A DNA stretch of 32,000 nt. Origin: Wallemia ichthyophaga EXF-994 (taxonomy: Eukaryota > Fungi > Basidiomycota). Every line of letters begins with the position of its first letter. Positions within the stretch are counted from its first letter, which is position 1. The notes beneath the pieces were generated by a model that saw only the letters and a list, made by a program, of their open reading frames with translations, was not told where the DNA came from and did no database searches. Location: assembly GCF_000400465.1 (NCBI RefSeq), contig NW_008806287.1, forward strand, positions 150,001 through 182,000, in the 5' to 3' direction. A program made the translations under genes and the position numbers. Shown here piece after piece: positions 6,156 to 15,647 of the stretch.

Positions 6156-8048
6156 TCATCTTAGTACTATTGGTGGTGCAAGCGTTGGTATCTCTCCCCA
6201 AGAGAATTGCTCATCTTTAAATGCCTTTTGAAATTGTTCAGGTAGTTCTTCTAGAGAAGGCGCAAATCGAGCTGATTGATCTACTTCCTCTGGCCTCTGT
6301 TCCCTGCTTGGCACTCCAAACGCGCTAGTTCCTATACTATGCCCAAATACTGTCTCCTGCTGACTAGCTGCTGGTTGTCCAAACGCTGATGGGCGTCCAA
6401 ATGCAGAGGGTTGATCAAGCGTCGAAGAAACGGGAGCTGGTGCTGGAGTTGTCGCTGGAGGTGCTACTGCAGGCGTATCAAATGAAGGTTTAAGTGAAAA
6501 AGCACTAGTAGGTGCTGGTGCAGACGTTTGTCCGAATGCACTTTGCCCAAACGAGCTAACTGGGGTCGATTGTTGTCCAAACGCATTATTGCCCCCACTA
6601 CCGCTTTGAGAAGTGTCATTGAATGCATTGTTCGATGAAGTACTGCTCTGACCAAAGGCGCTTGGTTGTGAGGTTTGTCCAAATGCAGATTGACCAAACG
6701 CTAAGCCAGTACCTCCACTGCCTCCTCCACCGCCGAATGCTCCGAATCCAGTCGACGCAGCCGGTGTGGTCCCGCCAAATGCCGATGAACCTGTACTAGA
6801 CTGACCGAATGCGTTTGTCTGACCAAAGGCGCTTGAAGGCGTCGTGCTTTGGCCGAACGCATTACTTGTAGGAGCACTGTTTTTTTGACCAAAAGCGTTG
6901 GTAGGTGTTGCGCTCTGGCCAAACACACTTGTTGAAGGCGTGGAAGTGGATCCAAATGCGCTTTTAGGCTCTGAAGATGCACCAAACGCTGGTTTAGACT
7001 CAGCAAACGCCCCAAAGCCACTTGAAGGTGCACTGGTTAGTGCAGATGCTCCAGATGCTCCGCCACCAAACGAATTTGGCTGTCCAAATGCACTGTTACT
7101 CGCAGGCGTTGCCGACTGTCCGAAAGCACCTTGAGTTGAGCTTCCAAACGCGCTTTGCTGAGATATAGATCCGAATGCATTCGATGAAGGCTTTGAAGAT
7201 GAGAAAGCACCAAAACCGCTCGACGGGGCACCAAAACCATTTGCAGTCGATCCACCAAACGCTGAAGATCCAAATGCTGGTTGGCTGGGCTGCGCACTTT
7301 GCCCGAATGCTGAAGTTGATGCTGCTGTTGTTGCTGATGGCTTAAATGCACTGTTCGCTGGTATCTGGCCCTTGAGCTTGGCATTAATATGCTTATGCGC
7401 GTCAAAGCTGTTTCTAGCCGCACTTTCAAATAACTGTAAGCATTTGGCTGTCTGTGATTCTTCGTATTGCACCTGATCAATACTATTAGCTCTATCTTTT
7501 TAGCGCCTTCAGTGTACTGCACTTACGTATTGTTGAGGGTTGCCAGACGCGTTCGCCTGGACAAACTTAAGACGCAACTCTTCAGGCGACTCGTCTAGCT
7601 CCAATATGAGATTAGGTTCCTCCTTCGCTGGCCCATAACTTGTAAGGGGATAAATCGGGCGCTCATCAACTAAATCGTGTCTGATTGATTCGGCACTAGT
7701 AGTTGTGAGATTTACGTAATCAAATCTCTGATACGCACCTTGAAGCGCTCTCGTTCTTGCGCGCAGAATTTGTATTACCAGAAGCAAATGACGAGTTACT
7801 AAAGTTGCTGAAACCGCCTTGTCTACTTCCAGCAGCTAGAATATGTCAGCCAGTTAATTACTTGCTCTTTGTAACCCACTTTGCTCTCCAGGATGTTGAT
7901 TTTTGCAGTTGCTACCAAACCGGCATCTAATATGCAGTGTCAGTCACTGATCACAATGTCCTTGATAACGCACGCTCCACGTAAAAAATACTGGCAAACT
8001 ACCTGTGACTTTGTCAGATCGTTCACTATGATTTCAGAGCCGTACCAT
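6156..8048 (-). CDS. NUP42: CCCH zinc-finger FG-repeat nucleoporin (Nup42/NUPL2/Amo1 type)
   Basis: Spliced N-terminus MVVCQYFLRGACRFGSNCKNQHP (C-x7-C-x5-C-x3-H), then YPLTSYGPAKEEPNL, many SAFG/AFG repeats, and a C-terminal FSWGEIPTLAPP resembling the Gle1-binding motif. Confidence 0.85.
6330..7330 (-). repeat. (S/N)AFG nucleoporin FG-repeat array (coding)
   Basis: Recurrent SAFGQ/NAFGQ/GFGAF units in the 6156-7472 ORF; boundaries approximate. Confidence 0.85.
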
Positions 8049-8189: not shown

Positions 8190-8276
8190 TCCTCCCACCC
8201 AGAATCGAACTAGGAACCTCAAGATGTGCTAGGTTTCAATTACAGTCTTGCGCTCTGCCAATTGAGCTATAGGAGG
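8190..8276 (-). tRNA. tRNA-Tyr(GTA) with a 14-nt intron (8226-8239)
   Basis: Minus strand CCTCCTA TAGCTCAATTGGCAGAGCG CAAGA CTGTAA [TTGAAACCTAGCAC] A TCTTG AGGTT CCTAG TTCGATT CTGGG TGGGAGG A. Shows C1-G72 and A73 Tyr identity, A and B boxes, an intron after position 37, and a T5 terminator at 8181-8185. Confidence 0.96.
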
Positions 8277-8293
8277 CTATAATTGAAATCTAA

Positions 8294-8658
8294 AATAAAA
8301 CAAAGGTATCAAATTATCTGTCCAGAACGTATACGAGTTCTTCAAACCGCAATTGACTACGTACCAAAGATACTCCGTTGGTTCAATGTAATTGAGAACC
8401 ACCAACAATTTACAAATTACGACGCTAGTCAAGAAACGCTCCCAGTAAATTCAGCACCCCCTTTGACTCCTCATGCTTTAAGAACTATTTATGGACGCTG
8501 TTTAAACAATTATTGTCTTAACAATATATTTAGATTTCATCATCATCAAATTTATCCCATAACGACGCTTTCCAACATTAGTTGATTATCAGGATGATCT
8601 TCAGCTCGCTGAGATATTATTAAAGTTGTTTTGTAAGCAATTTTCGGACACAATTCTC
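8294..8658 (+). mobile_element. Copy A: severely 5'-truncated non-LTR retrotransposon 3' remnant
   Basis: 8332-8391 encodes YEFFKPQLTTYQRYSVGSM*, 12/19 identical to the C-terminus of copy B, with the first 15 nt identical and the stop at the same position. It is followed by an AT-rich tail region with CATCATCATC near 8538-8547. Outer boundaries are inferred. Confidence 0.6.
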
Positions 8659-8671
8659 ATTGAAATCCTAA

Positions 8672-9182
8672 TTGTAGTAAATTTGCTTTCCCTACTGCCA
8701 AGTCTTACCGATTCCGATTCAAACTGTCAGATTCACCACTTTGCAGCAAGTGCAATGAAGTAGACAGTATCACACACAGGATTTTCAGATGTAGGAAGTT
8801 CGATCAAGCAAGATTATCGTTGAGGAGGAGGACATATGGAATGGGGTTAAGGTTCGAGATGAAATATATGCTTTCAAACGAAGAAGTTCTCAAAGCTCTC
8901 TACGAGTTCTTCAAAAACCAGCTCAGCACCCAACCGCGCACCTCCGTTAGCTCCACGTAGTTACCTCCCAATTGCGGCACACGTGCCAAGAATTGCATTC
9001 CTCTGAGTCACTACAATCATCAGCTTTCGATACACAAGAAGTATAGATAGGCGAAGATTATTAATCGTTGTAACGCTTTTGACTATATATTATTATTTCT
9101 ACCTATCATCTCCAGATCGAGAATGTGCACTACATAACATGATTTCTATCCAACAAATAATGGCCAAATTAATCAATGAAAG
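8672..9182 (+). mobile_element. Copy B: 5'-truncated LINE ORF2 3' end (CCHC zinc knuckle; I-group/Tad1-like) plus 3' UTR
   Basis: The ATG-less frame 8664-8960 reads FAFPTAKSYRFRFKLSDSPLCSKCNEVDSITHRIFRCRKFDQARLSLRRR..MKYMLSNEEVLKALYEFFKNQLSTQPRTSVSST*. C-x2-C-x7-H-x4-C at 8742-8792, preceded by a DSPLC motif, is typical of the LINE ORF2 C-terminus. Not in the ORF track. Outer boundaries are inferred. Confidence 0.78.
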
Positions 9183-9374: not shown

Positions 9375-11062
9375 TTACTGTCTTTAGGCAAGTCAACTAT
9401 GACATAATGGCAAAGTGAAGAAACTCACTCTCCGCTTTCGTTTGTGAACTCCATATGTTTGCGGATATCTTCATCCGAGACGGTCGGTCGAGTGCTATTG
9501 ACGGCTTTAATGAAATCGTTGAGGGAGAGGTCAGGTTCGAGCAATTCTTCAGAGTCGATGGTAGACCAACCACCTTCAAAGGCGTGTGGATCACCGGGTG
9601 AACAAGGAGTCAGCTTTCTAATTGAGTTTCCACTCTCGTCGTTGACATGTACCTCCTTGAAGTGAGTTGCAGAGAGTACCTTTCGTACAGGTTGCATCAA
9701 CGCGTCTCTCACGACGATGGCTATATCGGAACCAGAATAGCCTTCAGTCTTTTCGCCTAACAATCTGTAATCTTTTTGAGTCAACTTGCATGGAGTTTCA
9801 CCGACATTCAACCTAAACATCTCCTTTCTAGCCTCTGGTTCAGGTAGTGGTATATAGATTCTTTTCTCAAATCTTCTCTTTATAGCAACATCTAAAGACC
9901 ATGGTATATTGGTTGCACCGAGGACTAAAACCCCGTTGTCATCATTTCCTACGCCATTCATTTGAACGAGGAATTCAGTCTTAATTCTTCTGCTTGCCTC
10001 AGATTCACCTTCACCTCTGGTGCCAGCCAAACTGTCAACTTCATCGATGAAGATGATGGATGGTTTGTTTTCCCTGGCCATAGCGAAGAGATTTTTTACT
10101 AATCTTTCAGATTCGCCCATCCATTTGCTGACCAGATCTGAGGAGGAAACGCTAAAGAAGGTTGACTTGGATTCAGTGGCTACTGCTTTTGCGAGGTAAG
10201 ATTTACCAGTACCTGGTGGACCAAATAGTAAGATACCGCTGAGAGGTCATGAGGGAGTGGGGTGATTAAAGAGAGACCAACTCACCGCCAAGGTTTGCGG
10301 TTACCTTTGAAGAGATGAGGGAACTTTATCGGTAAGATGACAGCTTCTTTGAGAGCCTCTTTTGCAACTTCGAGACCAGCGACGTCATCCCAGCTAACGT
10401 TTGGTGTTTCATGTAGAATTGAGCCTTTGTATTGTTAATGTGGGTAATAAGGATGTCAAGCCACGCTCACTTGATAATCCAGCGCGTAATTTCTTAGTCT
10501 CAGCGTCATCGTTTTCGGCCTCTTTGTTACTAAATCGACGCGTTAGACCGTGGTTTAAGGGGAGGAGAAAGGACGTACGGTTGACCAGAATTAGCACTGG
10601 CAGTGTTAGTAGAACCAAGTGGTTGCTTCTTGTTTTCATCACTTTTAGCAATATGCTGGGAGAATGAGTGAGGAAGGAGAGAGAAAAAGTAGGAAATCAC
10701 CTGCTTGAGCTTCTCTGCTCTTGTGATGTAATCAACGAGTTTACCACGTATCATTGTCTTTAAAGAAGGGTTCTTTTCGTCTGAGTGGGATTGAGTTGGC
10801 AGTGTGGCTATGAATTACTTGAGACGCACATTTCAAAGCCATCATAAAGTAATCCAAGGCATTTAAATAGAGTCTCAAGGCCTCAGCGTAGTTTGTCTTT
10901 ACATCCTCTTCAATCGCCTGGGATTGGTTAGACTGTGGTCTATTAAGCGTGTGTTGATTATTACATTAGAAACCAAGTCAATGGCTTTCTAGTCGCTTTA
11001 TTAGAATATTTCAAGTCCCCGACTAGCACACGCACATCAAGGAAATTTGAATTGGATGTCAT
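9375..11062 (-). CDS. VPS4: AAA-ATPase Vps4 (ESCRT-III disassembly)
   Basis: Spliced MIT domain ([28 protein letters not shown]), Walker [11 protein letters not shown], Walker [35 protein letters not shown] beta domain; last exon gives ESGEQ*. Confidence 0.97.
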
Positions 11063-11768: not shown

Positions 11769-14521
11769 TCAACGTGCACTAGCAGCTATCATTTTATCTA
11801 TTACCTTTGCCCTCTTGTCTGTATCTGCAAATAACGCTTTGCATAGCCTGACTAATTCTTCGGACGTGAAGTCAACTAAAGAGCCTTGTTCATGCAAGTA
11901 ACTGAGGTCTACGAGACTCGCTTCAAGGATCTCACTCAAGTACGCCATCTTGAACCAACTCTCCGTGTGCTTATACCCTTGCGTTCCATTCTCCTCAAAT
12001 ACTTCCTCGATCCCTGCCTGCAATTCCCTACACAACTTACTCACTTTGTTACTATCTTCTTCGCTGATATCGTCTAGATCCTCTACCGCCTCTATAACAA
12101 ACCTCATCACAAACTCTGCTATTGATCCTAAGAGCTGATTGAGATCTTCTACGCTAATCACGCCTTTGACTGTCGATCTTAACCTCGAGATTGATGATAT
12201 TACCCCAGCGAACGCCTTCTCGTGCTTTATTGACAGATCAATCAGTGATCCTGCCTCTGTCAGCATCTCAACCAATTGACGCTTCTGTTCCACATCCACC
12301 TCCATCATAATCTTCTTGTTGAGCATACCCAGCTTTTTACTATTACTAATTAACTCCCTTTGCCACGTTTGATGCGATAAATACTCGCAGTCGTTTGCAA
12401 ATTGTAAAGCTAATGCTGGAACAAGTTTGATTGTCTCCTGGTGTACGTGAGGGAATAAACATCTGTATATATCTATGACAGATTCCATAACAGTTGTAGC
12501 CTCCTTCAACAGGTCCTTATCTGATGAAGGTATTTCATCTGTGTGCTTAAGAAACTCCTTATCACTATAGACGTCATCCATTAGACCAATCAGCTGATTT
12601 ACATACTCTGACACTACGATTCGCCGCTTCTGTCCAATTTGTTTCTCGTCCACCGCTTGCTGTGGTATTCGGGTATGTTTTGCTGTCTCACTCCATTTGC
12701 TATCTTTAACGGGATTGCGCTCCTCATCTTCAAGTGTCCAGCCATCTTCACTAATATTATCTTTTTTTGTTGGTACTGATGCTGCTGCTGCTGCCTCATC
12801 AATGTCCATGTCATCCTTCCAAGGATCGTCGTCATCGGAAATTGGATTGGCGGGTGTCACCTTCTGCTTATCATCAGCAATCTCCACATCCTCATCGTCG
12901 TCGAGTCCCCATCCATCGTCGTCATCATTGGCTATGATATCAGGCTGGGGTGAAGTAATGGACGAGCCAGACTCTGTGCGTGACAACTGAGGTTTACCAA
13001 TCTGCTCGCCTTGAGCTGTTTCCTCTTGCAGCTGCTCAATGCCTTCTTCCTCATCTAGCCCCCAACCGTCTTCGTCCTTCTCACCATCTTCCTCATCGAC
13101 GTCCTTAATCGATGCTAACGATGTCTTAGAGTCTGCCTTCTCTATCGAAGCACGCGGTTGAGGTAATACTTCCTCATCATCTAAACCCCAGCCATCCTCA
13201 TCACCCTCATTATCTGGTAGGTGATTACTTTCATCTATATTTGGTTGAGAGGATAATCTCAAAGCATCATCGCTTATTGTTCTCTCTATGTCCTCCGTAT
13301 TGTACTTGTCACTGCTATCCTTAACCAGAACTGAAATCTCAGCTGTAAACATATCCCAATTTGGTCTCAAAATAACCTTTCTAGCATCCTTCAAAGCTCG
13401 ATTTTGTCTTTGTTCTATCCAATAATTACCCCAATTCTGAGACACTTTCTTTATCAATCCATCCTGACTAACTTGATTTTCAAAATCAACTGCTTCATCT
13501 AATCTTCTTTGGAATAGGGTTACGTCTGGCCCACCTAAGCGATATGGTAGGGATGGGAGAAGGTATACATCCATCAATCTCTCCAACACAAGTGGTGTTA
13601 GCTGTTTACCAAGATCTTGGTATCTTTTGTTGATGAATTCTAAAAAAATAGCCAGATTTTTCAATTGTGTGCTCTTAATGGGAGCTTCTGTGGTGGGCTG
13701 AAGTGTGAGTGTGTCCTCGCTGAACACTATTGTGGGTATAAGAGCTTTGCTTGTTGAAGGTGGAAGAAGTGTATCAACAAAGTATTCCTTTACGCTGCTA
13801 TAAAGATTCTTGTAGTGATTAGAGAAGCTTTTGAGAGTATTCAGCGCGTCTACTATTTCCGACAAAGGACGAGTGCCGTATAGACTTTTGAGCGTCAGAC
13901 TGGAAGCTGTGCACTTGGTTGATTCATTCCATGCGCTGTTTAAATTGTTTGTGAGAAGTTCAGATAATTCGTAGTATTCCGTCTGAAGAGTAGAAGAACC
14001 GTCCCATCGCGACACAAAAGATCGTTGAAGCTGCTCAATATTAGATTTCATATCTGATCTTAAATATTGTGCAGCTGTGGAATAGTCATTCGAGTCTATA
14101 TGCCTCCTCAACGTCGACAAAGATGAATGGACGGAATCCAGTATAGTTTTAGCCTCGTGCTCTAGCTTTGCCTGCTTGTAATCTTCTATGTGAGCTCTGT
14201 ATTGCTCAACCTCCCGCTCTAAAGAGGGCTTCATTTGTTGGATTTCTAGGTAAATGTCATCTGATTTCGACGCTATTTGTGAGTGTAATTGGGAAATACT
14301 AAGCGACTGGCTGAGCTGATGAGCGTGTGTGCTCAGGTTCCCATTAAATTTATCTGCCAACTCGACCTGAGCGCCGTTGATGAGTGGTGCTGCCAATAGC
14401 GTGGCAGTATACATACTCTGCGGTCGTTGATATCATTCTCCAATCTTCCCTGCAATGCCACTAGATCGCGTGTATTATCTATCGTCGAAAGTGATTCTAT
14501 GTATCTGTCCAAGCAACTCAT
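11769..14521 (-). CDS. ZW10: Dsl1/ZW10 family tethering and kinetochore protein
   Basis: C-terminal [44 protein letters not shown] and a central acidic-Trp lasso. Exon 1 (MSCLDRY..NDRR, 14417-14521) joins the long ORF through intron 14367-14416; the ORF-track ATG at 14414 lies inside that intron's GTATGT donor. Confidence 0.88.
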
Positions 14522-14551: not shown

Positions 14552-15647
14552 TCAAACAATCCCATCTATCAATTTACAAAGCCTTATGTTCGATTGTATC
14601 ATTTCCTTGTAATTCAGCTTGAAATCCATCGCAACAGTCTTAATTTTCTTATCGACTAGCTCGGCATCAGGACGCAGTGGCTCATCCGCGCGCGACTTGG
14701 CACAAAGAATCATATCGAACAGCGTAAGCCAATTCCAGCCGCTACTCTTAGCAAATAGGTCATTAACTACGTCATACCATTCACTAGAATCCTTTGTCAA
14801 GTCTTTTATGTCCTCCACAGAAGTTTCAACTGCGGCATACTCAGCCTTCATCGACGCATACATATCCAGTAAGCAATTGCTATTGCTCCAGTTGTGGTTG
14901 ATCGATATACAGTCGTCCAAATTCTCTACCTGGTGATACCAGCCACTCGGTATGAAAATTATTTGTCCAGGCTCTTGAACCACCTCTGTCGCGTACTTTT
15001 CTGCCTCATAAAACTGTTTAAACACACTCCTATCCACATCGCGTACATCGTACACTATCTCCGATGTCGTAATATGTGGAAATCGCCGCAAAAAAGTTTC
15101 AGTATGTGGTGGAAAAAGCCTCCACAGCTTCCTGCCAATGATATTAGCTGACCAAGAGTAGCTCCTATATACATCACGGTGTAAGCCTGTAAAAGTAGAT
15201 GCTGATCCAGCATAGACGAATCTGAAATCGTCGTTTGTATGTGCTAGATAGTAGTCGTTCATCCAGTCGTCGCGTAAATATGACGGTGTAGAGTAGAAGG
15301 AATCCCCACTCCTCAATCCTAAATGCCAGTCTTTAATATACAGACGCTCCCCCTGCTTCATTCTGGTGATTGCATTGCCAACTGTCATTTCTTCTCGCTG
15401 CTGGTCGCTGAAATCTCTCACTTCACACAGCGCCACAGAAACGACCTGATCGCCATAGAGCGACGCTAGCGTATCCAGACTCTCCCATTCTTGATAAGCA
15501 GTCCAGCTCTTTACTGCATCCGAGTTAATCAAACAGGGGAGATTCGGTAACAGATTTCTAGACTGCCAATTAAAAGTCGAAGTGATCGCCGATAATTCTC
15601 CTCACTAAAAACTCATCATATTGTGGATCACCAATGACTGCGACCAT
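14552..15647 (-). CDS. JMJD4: JmjC 2-oxoglutarate/Fe(II) oxygenase, JMJD4-like
   Basis: Spliced N-terminus ..YDEFLSRNLLPNLPCLI, LYIKDWHL, DDFRFVYAG, HxD in TGLHRDVYRSYSWSANIIGRKLW, and GWYHQVENLDDCISINHNW. Confidence 0.85.

What the first reader, a model, noticed from the sequence alone, without database searches (positions are those of the whole stretch)
8190..9182. Two stacked 5'-truncated LINE 3' ends directly upstream of a tRNA gene: candidate tRNA-targeting non-LTR retrotransposon in a fungus
Seen: the only ~1-kb gap in an otherwise packed window contains two same-orientation fragments. Copy B (8664-8960) has a CCHC knuckle (CSKC-x7-H-x4-C) after YRFRFKLSDSPL. Copy A (8332-8391) repeats only its last 19 codons (12/19 identical, same stop position). 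Both point away from the tRNA-Tyr 5' end (8276), and copy A's recognisable homology starts about 45-55 nt from it. Established: this knuckle marks the C-terminus of LINE ORF2, 5' truncation is a product of target-primed reverse transcription, and Dictyostelium TRE5 non-LTR elements insert about 50 nt upstream of tRNA genes with their 5' ends facing the tRNA. Inference: two diverged insertions at one Pol III locus in a gene-dense genome suggest a safe-harbour strategy. The fungal tRNA-targeting elements I know are LTR types (Ty1/Ty3), so a LINE doing this could be new.
Basis: partly seen in the sequence, partly recalled or inferred. Interest (0 to 1): 0.78.

Follow-up and report, generated by a model that had tools for sequence, protein, structure and literature searches.

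The report
tRNA-targeting LINE remnants in Wallemia
The gap next to a tRNA-Tyr gene in this Wallemia ichthyophaga window holds dead fragments of two jumping-gene (LINE) families that, at every locus recovered from this species, sit upstream of a tRNA gene at set distances and face away from it, a habit described so far, in the reviews I read, only for LINEs of social amoebae.

Summary
tRNA-Tyr(GUA) lies at 8190-8276 on the minus strand. Upstream of its 5' end, on the plus strand, are two 5'-truncated LINE 3' ends. They belong to two different families:
- A, 8317-8547, with a (CAT)n tail and a 9-bp target-site duplication (TSD).
- B, 8688-9107, with a CCHC knuckle and a (TCTA)n-type tail.

The peptide is homologous to the extreme C-terminus of full-length APE-RT-RNaseH ORF2 proteins.

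The organism is Wallemia ichthyophaga. All 11 independent loci I could recover from it carry A and/or B fragments upstream of a tRNA gene in the opposite orientation. At least six tRNA species are involved.

The 5' junctions cluster whatever the truncation point. Family A sits at about 82 nt (five of six measured; the window copy is at 41). Family B sits at about 194-219 nt (four of six). TSDs of 9-14 bp and B-inside-A nesting fit position-specific target-primed integration.

Caveats:
- No full-length copy or RT was recovered.
- Insertions are fixed among strains.
- Family A copies in W. mellicola, one with a clean 13-bp TSD, have no tRNA gene nearby.

The reviews I read list such LINEs only from dictyostelids. 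I rate it a new variant of a known kind.

The parts
8190..8276 (-). tRNA-Tyr(GUA) gene with a 14-15-nt intron. Its 5' end (8276) faces the element pile.
   Evidence: Rfam RF00005, 55.2 bits, E 1.9e-9. ARAGORN in intron mode: tRNA-Tyr(gta) i(38,14).
8308..8316 (+). Left copy of the candidate target-site duplication of the family A insertion (ATCAAATTA), 32-40 nt upstream of the tRNA 5' end.
   Evidence: 9 bp with 1 mismatch against 8545-8553. The right copy overlaps the (CAT)n tail, so the boundary is ambiguous by about 3 nt.
8317..8547 (+). Family A LINE 3' end, 5'-truncated. It holds the last 24 codons of ORF2 (stop TAA at 8389-8391), a roughly 150-nt 3' UTR and a (CAT)3 tail (8538-8547).
   Evidence: blastn: 92% over 134 nt to L003 14777-14644 and 80% over 205 nt to L004 6567-6768. 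tblastn with P0101: E 3.7e-5. P0010 ends ...YEFFKPQLTTYQRYSDGSM. A (CAT)n terminus is shared by seven of the nine family A copies examined.
8545..8553 (+). Right copy of the candidate target-site duplication of the family A insertion (ATCAAATTT).
8554..8687 (.). Unassigned spacer between the two fragments. It is probably original intergenic DNA that lay between the tRNA and copy B before copy A inserted.
   Evidence: No blastn, tblastn or nhmmer hit to either family.
8688..9107 (+). Family B LINE 3' end, 5'-truncated. It holds the last 90 codons of ORF2 (stop TAG at 8958-8960) and a 147-nt 3' UTR ending in a degenerate (TCTA)n-type tail (TCTACCTATC).
   Evidence: blastn: 90.7% to L001, 90.6% to L003 and 87.0% to L004, E 1e-145 to 1e-167. 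tblastn with P0001: 86% over 90 aa, E 5e-48; with the full-length ORF2 P0017: E 6e-8. 3' ends compared.
8742..8792 (+). CCHC zinc knuckle (C-SK-C-x7-H-x4-C) of the ORF2 C-terminal domain.
   Evidence: Translation. Weak Pfam zf-RVT hit, E 0.18. The second Cys, the His and the last Cys are invariant in the family alignment and the first Cys is conserved in five of the six sequences. zf-RVT hits at E about 1e-5, just below Pfam's own cut-off (27.2 and 26.8 bits against 27.5), in the full-length relatives P0073 and P0054.
9129..9155 (+). Possible older remnant of a family B 3' end. Weak evidence.
   Evidence: 74% identical over 27 nt to 9082-9108 (repeat D1). Not significant on its own.

Best explanation
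The gap holds the dead 3' ends of two independent, 5'-truncated insertions. They come from two related non-LTR retrotransposon families, which I call A and B, of Wallemia ichthyophaga. ORF2 in this lineage has the order endonuclease (APE), reverse transcriptase, RNase H, CCHC knuckle.

In this species both families integrate by target-primed reverse transcription upstream of Pol III-transcribed tRNA genes, always with the 5' end facing the tRNA 5' end. The first nick falls on the strand that carries the tRNA sense sequence, on the side of the target away from the tRNA. The (CAT)n tail of A or the (TCTA)n tail of B is primed there. cDNA synthesis runs towards the tRNA and usually aborts, which gives the 5' truncation. 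A 9-14-bp target-site duplication is left.

The target is set by distance from the tRNA gene, not by sequence: about 82 nt for A and about 200 nt for B. At this locus B most likely inserted first, at about 170 nt. A then inserted at 32-40 nt and pushed B out to 412 nt.

Shown: element identity, orientation, distances, target-site duplications, tails and nesting.

Inferred: the ruler is the Pol III transcription complex (TFIIIB, TFIIIC or Pol III, and perhaps the first upstream nucleosome for B), by analogy with TRE5-A and Ty1/Ty3. It is also inferred that the habit persists because it spares genes in a 9.6-Mb genome that is about 75% coding.
For: LINE identity:
- A phmmer search with P0001 hits the last ~130 residues of 1144-1323-aa proteins, at E 1.4e-8 for the best of them (P0017) and 1e-5 to 7e-4 for the other six.
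- Those proteins carry Exo_endo_phos_2, RVT_1 and RNase_H.
- The RNase_H half-domain is present in the longer copy in L003 (E 2.2e-5).

Organism:
- Every close protein hit is from Wallemia ichthyophaga.
- Two window ORFs are exact proteins on an NCBI contig, and their cluster mates are W. ichthyophaga.

tRNA association:
- The loci are the window, L001, L003 (two), L004 (two), L005, L008, L009 and L011 (two), 11 independent loci.
- Every fragment lies upstream of a tRNA 5' end on the opposite strand.
- With about 144 tRNA genes in 9.6 Mb (11.55 kb of tRNA), about 0.9% of the genome lies within 600 nt upstream of one.
- The two-sided probability of 11 of 11 orientations by chance is about 0.001.

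Fixed distances despite different truncation points:
- Family A: 80, 82, 83, 83, 85 nt, and the window copy at 41. Five of six fall within 5 nt; 0 of 200,000 uniform simulations match this.
- Family B: 194, 201, 204, 219 nt (p about 0.004).

Target-site duplications:
- L009 B: 13 bp exact.
- L003 A: 13 bp, 1 mismatch.
- L004 B: 10 bp, 1 mismatch.
- L001 B: 13 bp, 2 mismatches.
- Window A: 9 bp, 1 mismatch.

Nesting: in L004 and L009 a B copy splits an A copy at about 200 nt from the tRNA, at different places within A. This is what a distance ruler predicts.

Literature: stacking at one tRNA gene is also described for dictyostelid elements.
Against: - No full-length element, RT domain or ORF1 was recovered from Wallemia, so activity and clade are unknown.
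- The orthologous loci compared across strains (L001/L002, L004/L006/L007, L009/L010) are 98.4-100% identical with no empty site. No insertion event has been seen happening.
- The window's copy A is at 41 nt, not about 82. Copy B in L003 is at about 355 nt and copy B in L005 at about 583 nt.
- In W. mellicola a 645-bp family A copy with an exact 13-bp target-site duplication (L012) and further fragments (L013) have no detectable tRNA or other Rfam RNA gene nearby.
- The sample is 11 loci reached through annotated ORF fragments, not a whole-genome census.
- The tethering partner is pure analogy.
Confidence: 0.8

Rival explanations
1. Retention bias. The LINEs inserted at random. In a genome that is about 75% coding, only copies in the dispensable DNA upstream of tRNA genes escaped purifying selection.
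For: The genome is very compact: 9.6 Mb with 1.67% repeats. All copies are old and fixed among strains. W. mellicola copies occur away from tRNA genes, in gene-poor contig ends.
Against: Selection alone does not predict 11 of 11 loci with the same relative orientation. It does not predict the absence of copies downstream of tRNA genes or in other intergenic DNA of about 150 kb examined. It does not predict 5' junctions clustered at 80-85 nt and 194-219 nt regardless of copy length. It does not predict repeated hits at one locus, including B landing inside A at the same distance.
Confidence: 0.12
2. Sequence-specific or self-homing integration. The endonuclease recognises a DNA motif, for example within older copies of the element, that happens to lie upstream of tRNA genes.
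For: Family B is found inside or next to family A sequence in L003, L004 and L009. Many target-specific LINEs recognise repeats (abstract of PMC4640811).
Against: The target-site duplications are unrelated in sequence: ATCAAATTA, AGGCAGCGCGGCG, CGAAACAGCTGTG, TTAAGTCCAACGC, ATTTTAGAAT. B inserted into unique DNA in L001 and L011 and into three different places within A. What the sites share is the distance from the tRNA, not the sequence.
Confidence: 0.05
3. One insertion followed by a local segmental duplication produced copies A and B.
For: Same orientation, and the last 19 codons are similar (12 of 19 identical; 15-nt exact match).
Against: Copy A's 3' UTR and (CAT)n tail match family A copies at other loci (92% to L003). 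They do not match copy B's 3' UTR or its (TCTA)n-type tail. Copy A has its own flanking duplication.
Confidence: 0.01
4. The fragments are part of a tRNA-derived SINE or of a host gene, not LINE remnants.
For: They are close to a tRNA gene, and a short open frame of 98 codons is present.
Against: The tRNA is on the opposite strand, head to head, whereas a SINE head is co-linear with its tail. The tRNA is a normal intron-containing gene. The peptide family maps to the C-terminus of APE-RT-RNaseH proteins. Copies are multicopy and flanked by target-site duplications.
Confidence: 0.01

Closest known systems
TRE5-A (and TRE5-B/C), tRNA gene-targeted non-LTR retrotransposons of Dictyostelium discoideum
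   Same: Both are APE-type LINEs that integrate upstream of tRNA genes in the opposite transcriptional orientation. Both are often 5'-truncated, stack at one tRNA gene, and live in a compact genome (PMC5911963; PMC5006619).
   Different: TRE5 inserts 44-54 bp upstream, is placed in the L1 clade, and has an APE-RT-ZF ORF2 without RNase H and an oligo(A) tail. The Wallemia families sit at about 82 and about 200 nt, have an RNase H domain, and end in (CAT)n or (TCTA)n. The host is a basidiomycete fungus.
Dp_NLTR-A and Pp_NLTR-B (Dictyostelium purpureum, Polysphondylium pallidum)
   Same: Both are non-LTR elements with an RNase H domain downstream of RT that are found upstream of tRNA genes.
   Different: Their distances are 2-6 bp and 39-64 bp, and the hosts are amoebozoans. 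Homology to the Wallemia families could not be tested because no sequences were available in the tools.
Ty1 and Ty3 of Saccharomyces cerevisiae, and Tj1, Tyl3 and Tyl6 of other yeasts
   Same: These are fungal retrotransposons that use the Pol III machinery to find safe sites upstream of tRNA genes. Ty1 has a broad upstream window that extends beyond 200 bp.
   Different: They are LTR elements that integrate with an integrase. Ty3 can insert in both orientations. The Wallemia elements have no LTRs, have simple-repeat tails and show 5' truncation.
APE-RT-RNaseH LINEs of fungi (Tad1-like architecture)
   Same: The domain order of the nearest full-length relatives is Exo_endo_phos_2, RVT_1, RNase_H, then a C-terminal CCHC.
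   Different: Clade membership was not tested because no Wallemia RT was recovered. I know of no tRNA gene targeting reported for Tad1-like elements (my own knowledge, plus the searches).

Membership tests
Non-LTR (LINE) retrotransposon, APE type | ORF2 with a reverse transcriptase domain | tested here: inconclusive
   No RT sequence is present in the window or in any Wallemia fragment recovered. The longest copy, in L008, reaches only the post-RT region. RT is present in the homologous full-length proteins P0017, P0036, P0045, P0053, P0073, P0084 and P0086.
Non-LTR (LINE) retrotransposon, APE type | C-terminal ORF2 region with a CCHC knuckle, homologous to known LINE ORF2 | tested here: met
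   phmmer hits to the C-termini of APE-RT-RNaseH proteins, at E 1.4e-8 for the best (P0017) and 1e-5 to 7e-4 for the other six. The knuckle lies at 8742-8792.
Non-LTR (LINE) retrotransposon, APE type | Marks of target-primed reverse transcription: variable 5' truncation, a common 3' end with a simple-repeat tail, and target-site duplications | tested here: met
   Common 3' ends: a (CAT)n tail in seven of nine A copies and a (TCTA)n tail in B. 5' ends fall at several different ORF2 positions. Target-site duplications are 9-14 bp.
tRNA gene-targeted retroelements (functional class, TRE5-like behaviour) | Copies lie at a defined distance upstream of many different tRNA genes | tested here: met
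   11 of 11 W. ichthyophaga loci, involving at least six tRNA species. Family A at 80-85 nt (five of six measured), family B at 194-219 nt (four of six). Not met in the few W. mellicola copies seen.
tRNA gene-targeted retroelements (functional class, TRE5-like behaviour) | Fixed orientation relative to the tRNA gene | tested here: met
   All fragments lie on the strand opposite to the tRNA, with the 5' end facing it.
tRNA gene-targeted retroelements (functional class, TRE5-like behaviour) | De novo integrations go to tRNA genes, and an element protein binds TFIIIB, TFIIIC or Pol III | not testable with these tools
   This needs a tagged-element assay and interaction tests. It is known for TRE5-A ORF1 with TFIIIB.
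TRE clade (L1-clade elements of dictyostelids) | APE-RT-ZF ORF2 without RNase H, oligo(A) tail, RT groups with TRE/L1 | tested here: not met
   An RNase_H domain is present. The tails are (CAT)n and (TCTA)n. No RT tree could be made.
Tad1 clade of fungal LINEs | RT phylogeny places the element within Tad1 | not tested
   Only the APE-RT-RNaseH domain order of distant relatives is known. Those relatives are unnamed metagenome proteins.
tRNA-derived SINE | A tRNA-like head co-linear with a LINE-derived tail | tested here: not met
   The tRNA is on the opposite strand and is a complete intron-containing gene.
LTR retrotransposons that target tRNA genes (Ty1/Ty3 type) | Flanking LTRs and an integrase | tested here: not met
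   No long direct repeats flank the fragments. The protein homology is to LINE ORF2.

The most novel reading that the evidence does not exclude
Basidiomycete fungi evolved Pol III-guided, orientation-specific LINE integration independently of amoebae. In Wallemia two sister LINE families use two different molecular rulers, about 82 bp and about 200 bp upstream of the tRNA 5' end. This would imply tethering to different parts of the Pol III promoter complex or to the first upstream nucleosome. Intact copies may still be active in some Wallemia species.
Probability: 0.55. Interest if true: 0.8.

Novelty: new variant of a known kind. Interest (0 to 1): 0.72.

Why it matters
Integration next to tRNA genes is the textbook example of a safe-harbour strategy in compact genomes. 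For non-LTR elements the reviews I read list it only from dictyostelid amoebae. The fungal cases they list are all LTR elements that use an integrase.

A fungal LINE lineage with the same habit would be a further independent origin of this behaviour. It has a different domain architecture (with RNase H) and two new, discrete distances. That gives a comparative handle on how an endonuclease/RT complex, rather than an integrase, reads the Pol III complex.

It also explains a good part of the small repeat fraction of one of the smallest basidiomycete genomes. In addition it gives a practical warning: many 'hypothetical proteins' annotated next to Wallemia tRNA genes are LINE debris.

Tried and rejected
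Searches that gave nothing useful:
- Genome contigs holds only bacteria and archaea, so I did not use it.
- A protein-pattern scan of metagenome contigs with alignment A4 found no relatives, and a DNA-pattern scan with the family A 3' end found no match.
- Two homologous-protein searches, with the copy B peptide and with an RNaseH-plus-C-terminus conceptual translation, returned only short W. ichthyophaga fragments and no full-length element. The profile search added W. mellicola and unnamed ENA fragments but again no RT.
- The nearest full-length relatives are unnamed metagenome proteins, so no clade name could be read off.

Steps that were blocked:
- I could not fetch the orthologous tRNA-Tyr locus from other strains or species. 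The only window ORFs that exist as exact database proteins lie 16-21 kb away, beyond the 10-kb flank limit.
- The last contig look-up, on a W. mellicola copy, landed on a contig end, so its upstream side is missing.

Technical lessons:
- The Rfam gathering-mode run missed two genuine tRNA genes in L004, which a more permissive run scored at 60.8 bits. ARAGORN in bacterial mode missed intron-containing tRNAs or gave them the wrong isotype.

Ideas rejected:
- That the conserved ~65-nt (CAT)n tail after copy B in L003 and L004 belongs to family B. It is the distal part of a family A copy that B split.
- That the flanks of the split tRNA-Arg in L011 are decayed halves of a tandem pair. Their similarity is no better than shuffled sequence.
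Full report
**1. What is in the window**

Rfam finds one RNA gene in the 32 kb. It is a tRNA at 8190-8276 on the minus strand (55.2 bits) with a 15-nt insert after the anticodon. Its 5' end is at 8276, so everything to the right lies upstream of the gene.

The next gene to the right is VPS4, also on the minus strand. Its last exon ends at 9425 and matches the AAA and Vps4_C families. The pile of fragments therefore lies between the tRNA 5' end and the 3' end of VPS4.

The frame that opens at 8664 reads ...FPTAKSYRFRFKLSDSPLCSKCNEVDSITHRIFRC...YEFFKNQLSTQPRTSVSST*, with C-x2-C-x7-H-x4-C at 8742-8792. The frame through 8332-8391 reads YEFFKPQLTTYQRYSVGSM*. The two DNA stretches share an exact 15-mer and a colinear 21-mer at the same offset of 569 nt.

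**2. The fragments are LINE ORF2 ends**

Pfam alone is weak on copy B (zf-RVT, E 0.18).

A full HMMER scan of 1.8 billion representative proteins with the closest intact relative (P0001, 170 aa) gave 93 hits. Seven of them are proteins of 1144-1323 aa, and in each the match lies in the last ~130 residues, at E 1.4e-8 for the best (P0017) and 1e-5 to 7e-4 for the others. Pfam finds Exo_endo_phos_2, RVT_1 and RNase_H in all seven and a zf-RVT match just below Pfam's cut-off in one of them.

A longer Wallemia copy in L003 continues upstream into the C-terminal half of an RNase H domain (WIPGHMNVEGNELAD; Pfam E 2.2e-5).

The peptide is therefore the C-terminal domain of an APE-RT-RNaseH-CCHC ORF2 and not a host gene.

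**3. The organism**

Every close protein hit is a 'hypothetical protein' of Wallemia ichthyophaga, and a few are from W. mellicola. Two ORFs of the window exist as exact proteins on a 332,823-nt NCBI contig, and their 90% clusters contain named W. ichthyophaga proteins.

W. ichthyophaga has a 9.6-Mb genome that is about three-quarters coding. It has 1.67% repeats and 11.55 kb of tRNA genes, which is about 144 genes. Its genome paper and its population-genomics paper do not mention retrotransposons.

**4. Two families, not one**

Comparison with copies at other loci redefines the limits.
- Copy B is 8688-9107. It is 87-91% identical to copies in L001, L003 and L004.
- Copy A is 8317-8547. It is 92% identical over 134 nt to L003 14777-14644 and 80% over 205 nt to L004 6567-6768.

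The two share the last ~20 codons but have different 3' UTRs.
- Seven of the nine family A copies examined end in ...AACAATATATTTAGATTT(CAT)n.
- All family B copies end in ...GATTTCTATCTA(TCTA)n.
- Family A proteins end ...LQALYEFFKPQLTTYQRYSxGSx (P0010, P0016, P0101). Family B proteins end ...YEFFKNQxSTHPxASGSST.

Copy A is flanked by ATCAAATTA (8308-8316) and ATCAAATTT (8545-8553).

The segmental-duplication explanation is therefore rejected.

**5. Association with tRNA genes**

I fetched every locus I could reach through annotated ORF fragments (12 look-ups). I scanned them with ARAGORN in intron mode, Rfam, blastn, tblastn and nhmmer. Strain duplicates were removed.

That leaves 11 independent W. 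ichthyophaga tRNA loci that carry A and/or B fragments:
- the window (Tyr)
- L001 (Lys-CTT)
- L003 (Asn, and a class II tRNA at 14890)
- L004 (two identical intron-containing tRNAs, at 6436 and 9706)
- L005
- L008
- L009 (a second Lys-CTT locus)
- L011 (a tRNA at 13082, and a tRNA-like gene at 9933)

In every case the fragments lie upstream of the tRNA 5' end on the opposite strand. Nowhere in about 150 kb of non-redundant W. ichthyophaga sequence is there a fragment elsewhere. In the 32-kb window the only hits are at 8317-9111.

About 0.9% of the genome lies within 600 nt upstream of a tRNA gene, so this is far beyond chance. The orientation alone (11 of 11) has a two-sided probability of about 0.001.

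Two or three tRNA genes in these loci have no fragment: L004 8069 and L008 7446. A possible tRNA at L005 8280 has only a 38-nt family B tail remnant 334 nt upstream.

**6. Distance rulers**

The 5' junction, measured from the tRNA 5' end, is nearly constant within each family, although the copies are truncated at different ORF2 positions.

Family A:
- L011: 80 nt
- L009: 82 nt
- L004, both loci: 83 nt each
- L003: 85 nt
- the window: 41 nt
- L008: somewhere between 22 and 94 nt (uncertain)

Five of six measured values fall within 5 nt. This never occurred in 200,000 uniform simulations.

Family B:
- L009: 194 nt
- L011: 201 nt
- L004: 204 nt
- L001: 219 nt
- the window: 412 nt, which becomes about 170 nt once copy A and one copy of its target-site duplication are removed
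- L003: about 355 nt
- L005: about 583 nt (a rearranged locus)

Four of six within 25 nt has p about 0.004.

The sequences between the tRNA and the element are unrelated among loci, so these are independent events.

The model also explains the nested structures. In L004 and L009 an A copy that starts at about 82 nt is split by a B copy at about 200 nt, at different places within A. The B copies are flanked by duplications of 10 bp (ATTTTAGAAT/ATTTAAGAAT) and 13 bp (TTAAGTCCAACGC, exact).

Other target-site duplications:
- L003 A: 13 bp with 1 mismatch
- L001 B: 13 bp with 2 mismatches

The duplicated sequences have nothing in common. The target is a position, not a motif.

**7. Mechanism**

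The anatomy is that of target-primed reverse transcription by an APE-type LINE. The first nick is on the strand that carries the tRNA sense sequence, at the distal edge of the target. The simple-repeat tail is primed there. cDNA synthesis runs towards the tRNA gene and often aborts. The second nick is offset by 9-14 bp.

A constant position and orientation relative to genes whose only shared feature is Pol III transcription points to tethering to the Pol III apparatus. This has been shown for TRE5-A (ORF1 binds TFIIIB, and targeting depends on the B box) and for Ty1 and Ty3. This step is inferred, not shown.

Two distances for two sister families suggest two contact points. One would lie just beyond TFIIIB and the other about 120 bp further out, perhaps a nucleosome feature. 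That is speculation.

For this window the order of events is most simply B first and A second. A roughly 41-nt deletion next to the tRNA would bring both copies onto the modal distances (82 and 211 nt), but nothing tests this.

**8. What weakens the case**

- No RT, APE or ORF1 sequence from Wallemia was recovered, so the clade and current activity are unknown.
- Copies within a family differ by 9-20%.
- The three loci that could be compared across strains are 98.4-100% identical with no empty site. The insertions are old.
- In W. mellicola, a 645-bp family A copy with an exact 13-bp target-site duplication (L012 9978-10622) and three fragments in a gene-free 8-kb contig end (L013) have no tRNA or other Rfam RNA gene nearby. 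Either that subfamily does not target tRNA genes or the specificity is not absolute.
- My sample was reached through gene models, not a genome-wide scan.

**9. Comparison with what is known**

The behaviour matches TRE5 of Dictyostelium, which sits upstream in the opposite orientation. Stacked insertions are also noted for dictyostelid elements.

Membership in the TRE lineage is not supported. TRE5 is an L1-clade element with an APE-RT-ZF ORF2 and an oligo(A) tail, and it inserts at 44-54 bp. The dictyostelid NLTR-A and NLTR-B share the RNase H domain and tRNA targeting, at 2-6 and 39-64 bp. I could not test homology to them.

The 2016 and 2018 reviews list tRNA-targeting non-LTR elements only from dictyostelids, and the fungal cases only as LTR elements. 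Six literature searches found nothing on Wallemia retroelements or on fungal LINEs at tRNA genes.

I therefore rate this a new variant of a known kind.

**10. Verdict**

It is strengthened by the two distance rulers and the nested insertions. It is limited by the lack of an intact element and by the W. mellicola exceptions.

Noticed in passing
L011 (W. ichthyophaga SPOL01000044), minus strand, about 9933-9822: A tRNA 3' half, then CTAC, then a tRNA 5' half, followed by a T-run. Joined in permuted order they fold into a perfect 72-nt tRNA-Arg(ACG) cloverleaf in ARAGORN. Rfam sees only a weak YrlA hit (33 bits). This is either a candidate circularly permuted tRNA gene, which I do not know from fungi, or a rearranged pseudogene. 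A family A LINE fragment sits about 80 nt upstream of it, just as at ordinary tRNA genes..
   Followed up: partly
L001 10087, L004 9910, L011 12881 (minus strand), L009 9969, L012 9978: Five copies from both families and two species begin within about 20 nt of the same ORF2 position, just after the RNase H domain. Four of them are about 645 nt long. Random 5' truncation would not give this. Possible causes are an internal promoter, a strong RT stop at an A-rich stretch, or a short non-autonomous lineage..
   Followed up: partly
L012 9965-10635 and L013 1-9086 (W. mellicola): Family A copies that are not next to any detectable tRNA gene. One is a 645-bp copy with an exact 13-bp target-site duplication (TAAGTATGATTTA). 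Three fragments lie in an 8.4-kb stretch with no called genes at a contig end. The 205-codon ORF at the contig edge of L013 is intact to its stop codon, which hints at longer copies that break the assembly..
   Followed up: partly
L009 10825-11488: Directly after the LINE pile lies a 660-nt stretch that is 79% identical to part of the neighbouring carnitine acyltransferase gene (L010 13591-14256). This is a gene-fragment duplicate of unknown origin..
   Followed up: no
L003 9498-9850 and 10727-10789: The family B copy in L003 starts about 355 nt from tRNA-Asn and is followed by the last 63 nt of a family A copy. The expected left part of that A copy is not detectable. The interval is C/T-rich low-complexity DNA. 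The two-ruler model does not explain this..
   Followed up: partly
L004 6354-6436 and 9624-9706; L003 14890-14977 and L005 9282-9369: Pairs of near-identical intron-containing tRNA genes, each with its own independent LINE insertion. The Rfam gathering-mode run missed the L004 pair, which scores 60.8 bits with laxer filters. ARAGORN's isotype calls changed between modes (Phe against Val). tRNA annotation in this genome needs intron-aware tools..
   Followed up: yes
Gene models on L001, L003-L011 (P0001-P0006, P0010, P0101, P0106, P0113 and others): Many 'hypothetical proteins' annotated next to tRNA genes in the W. ichthyophaga strain assemblies are spliced-together, frame-shifted LINE debris. 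Some fuse a family B 3' end to a family A C-terminus (P0010)..
   Followed up: yes
window 9129-9155: A 27-nt stretch 74% identical to the family B 3' end at 9082-9108, just beyond copy B. It may be the eroded tail of an even older insertion..
   Followed up: no
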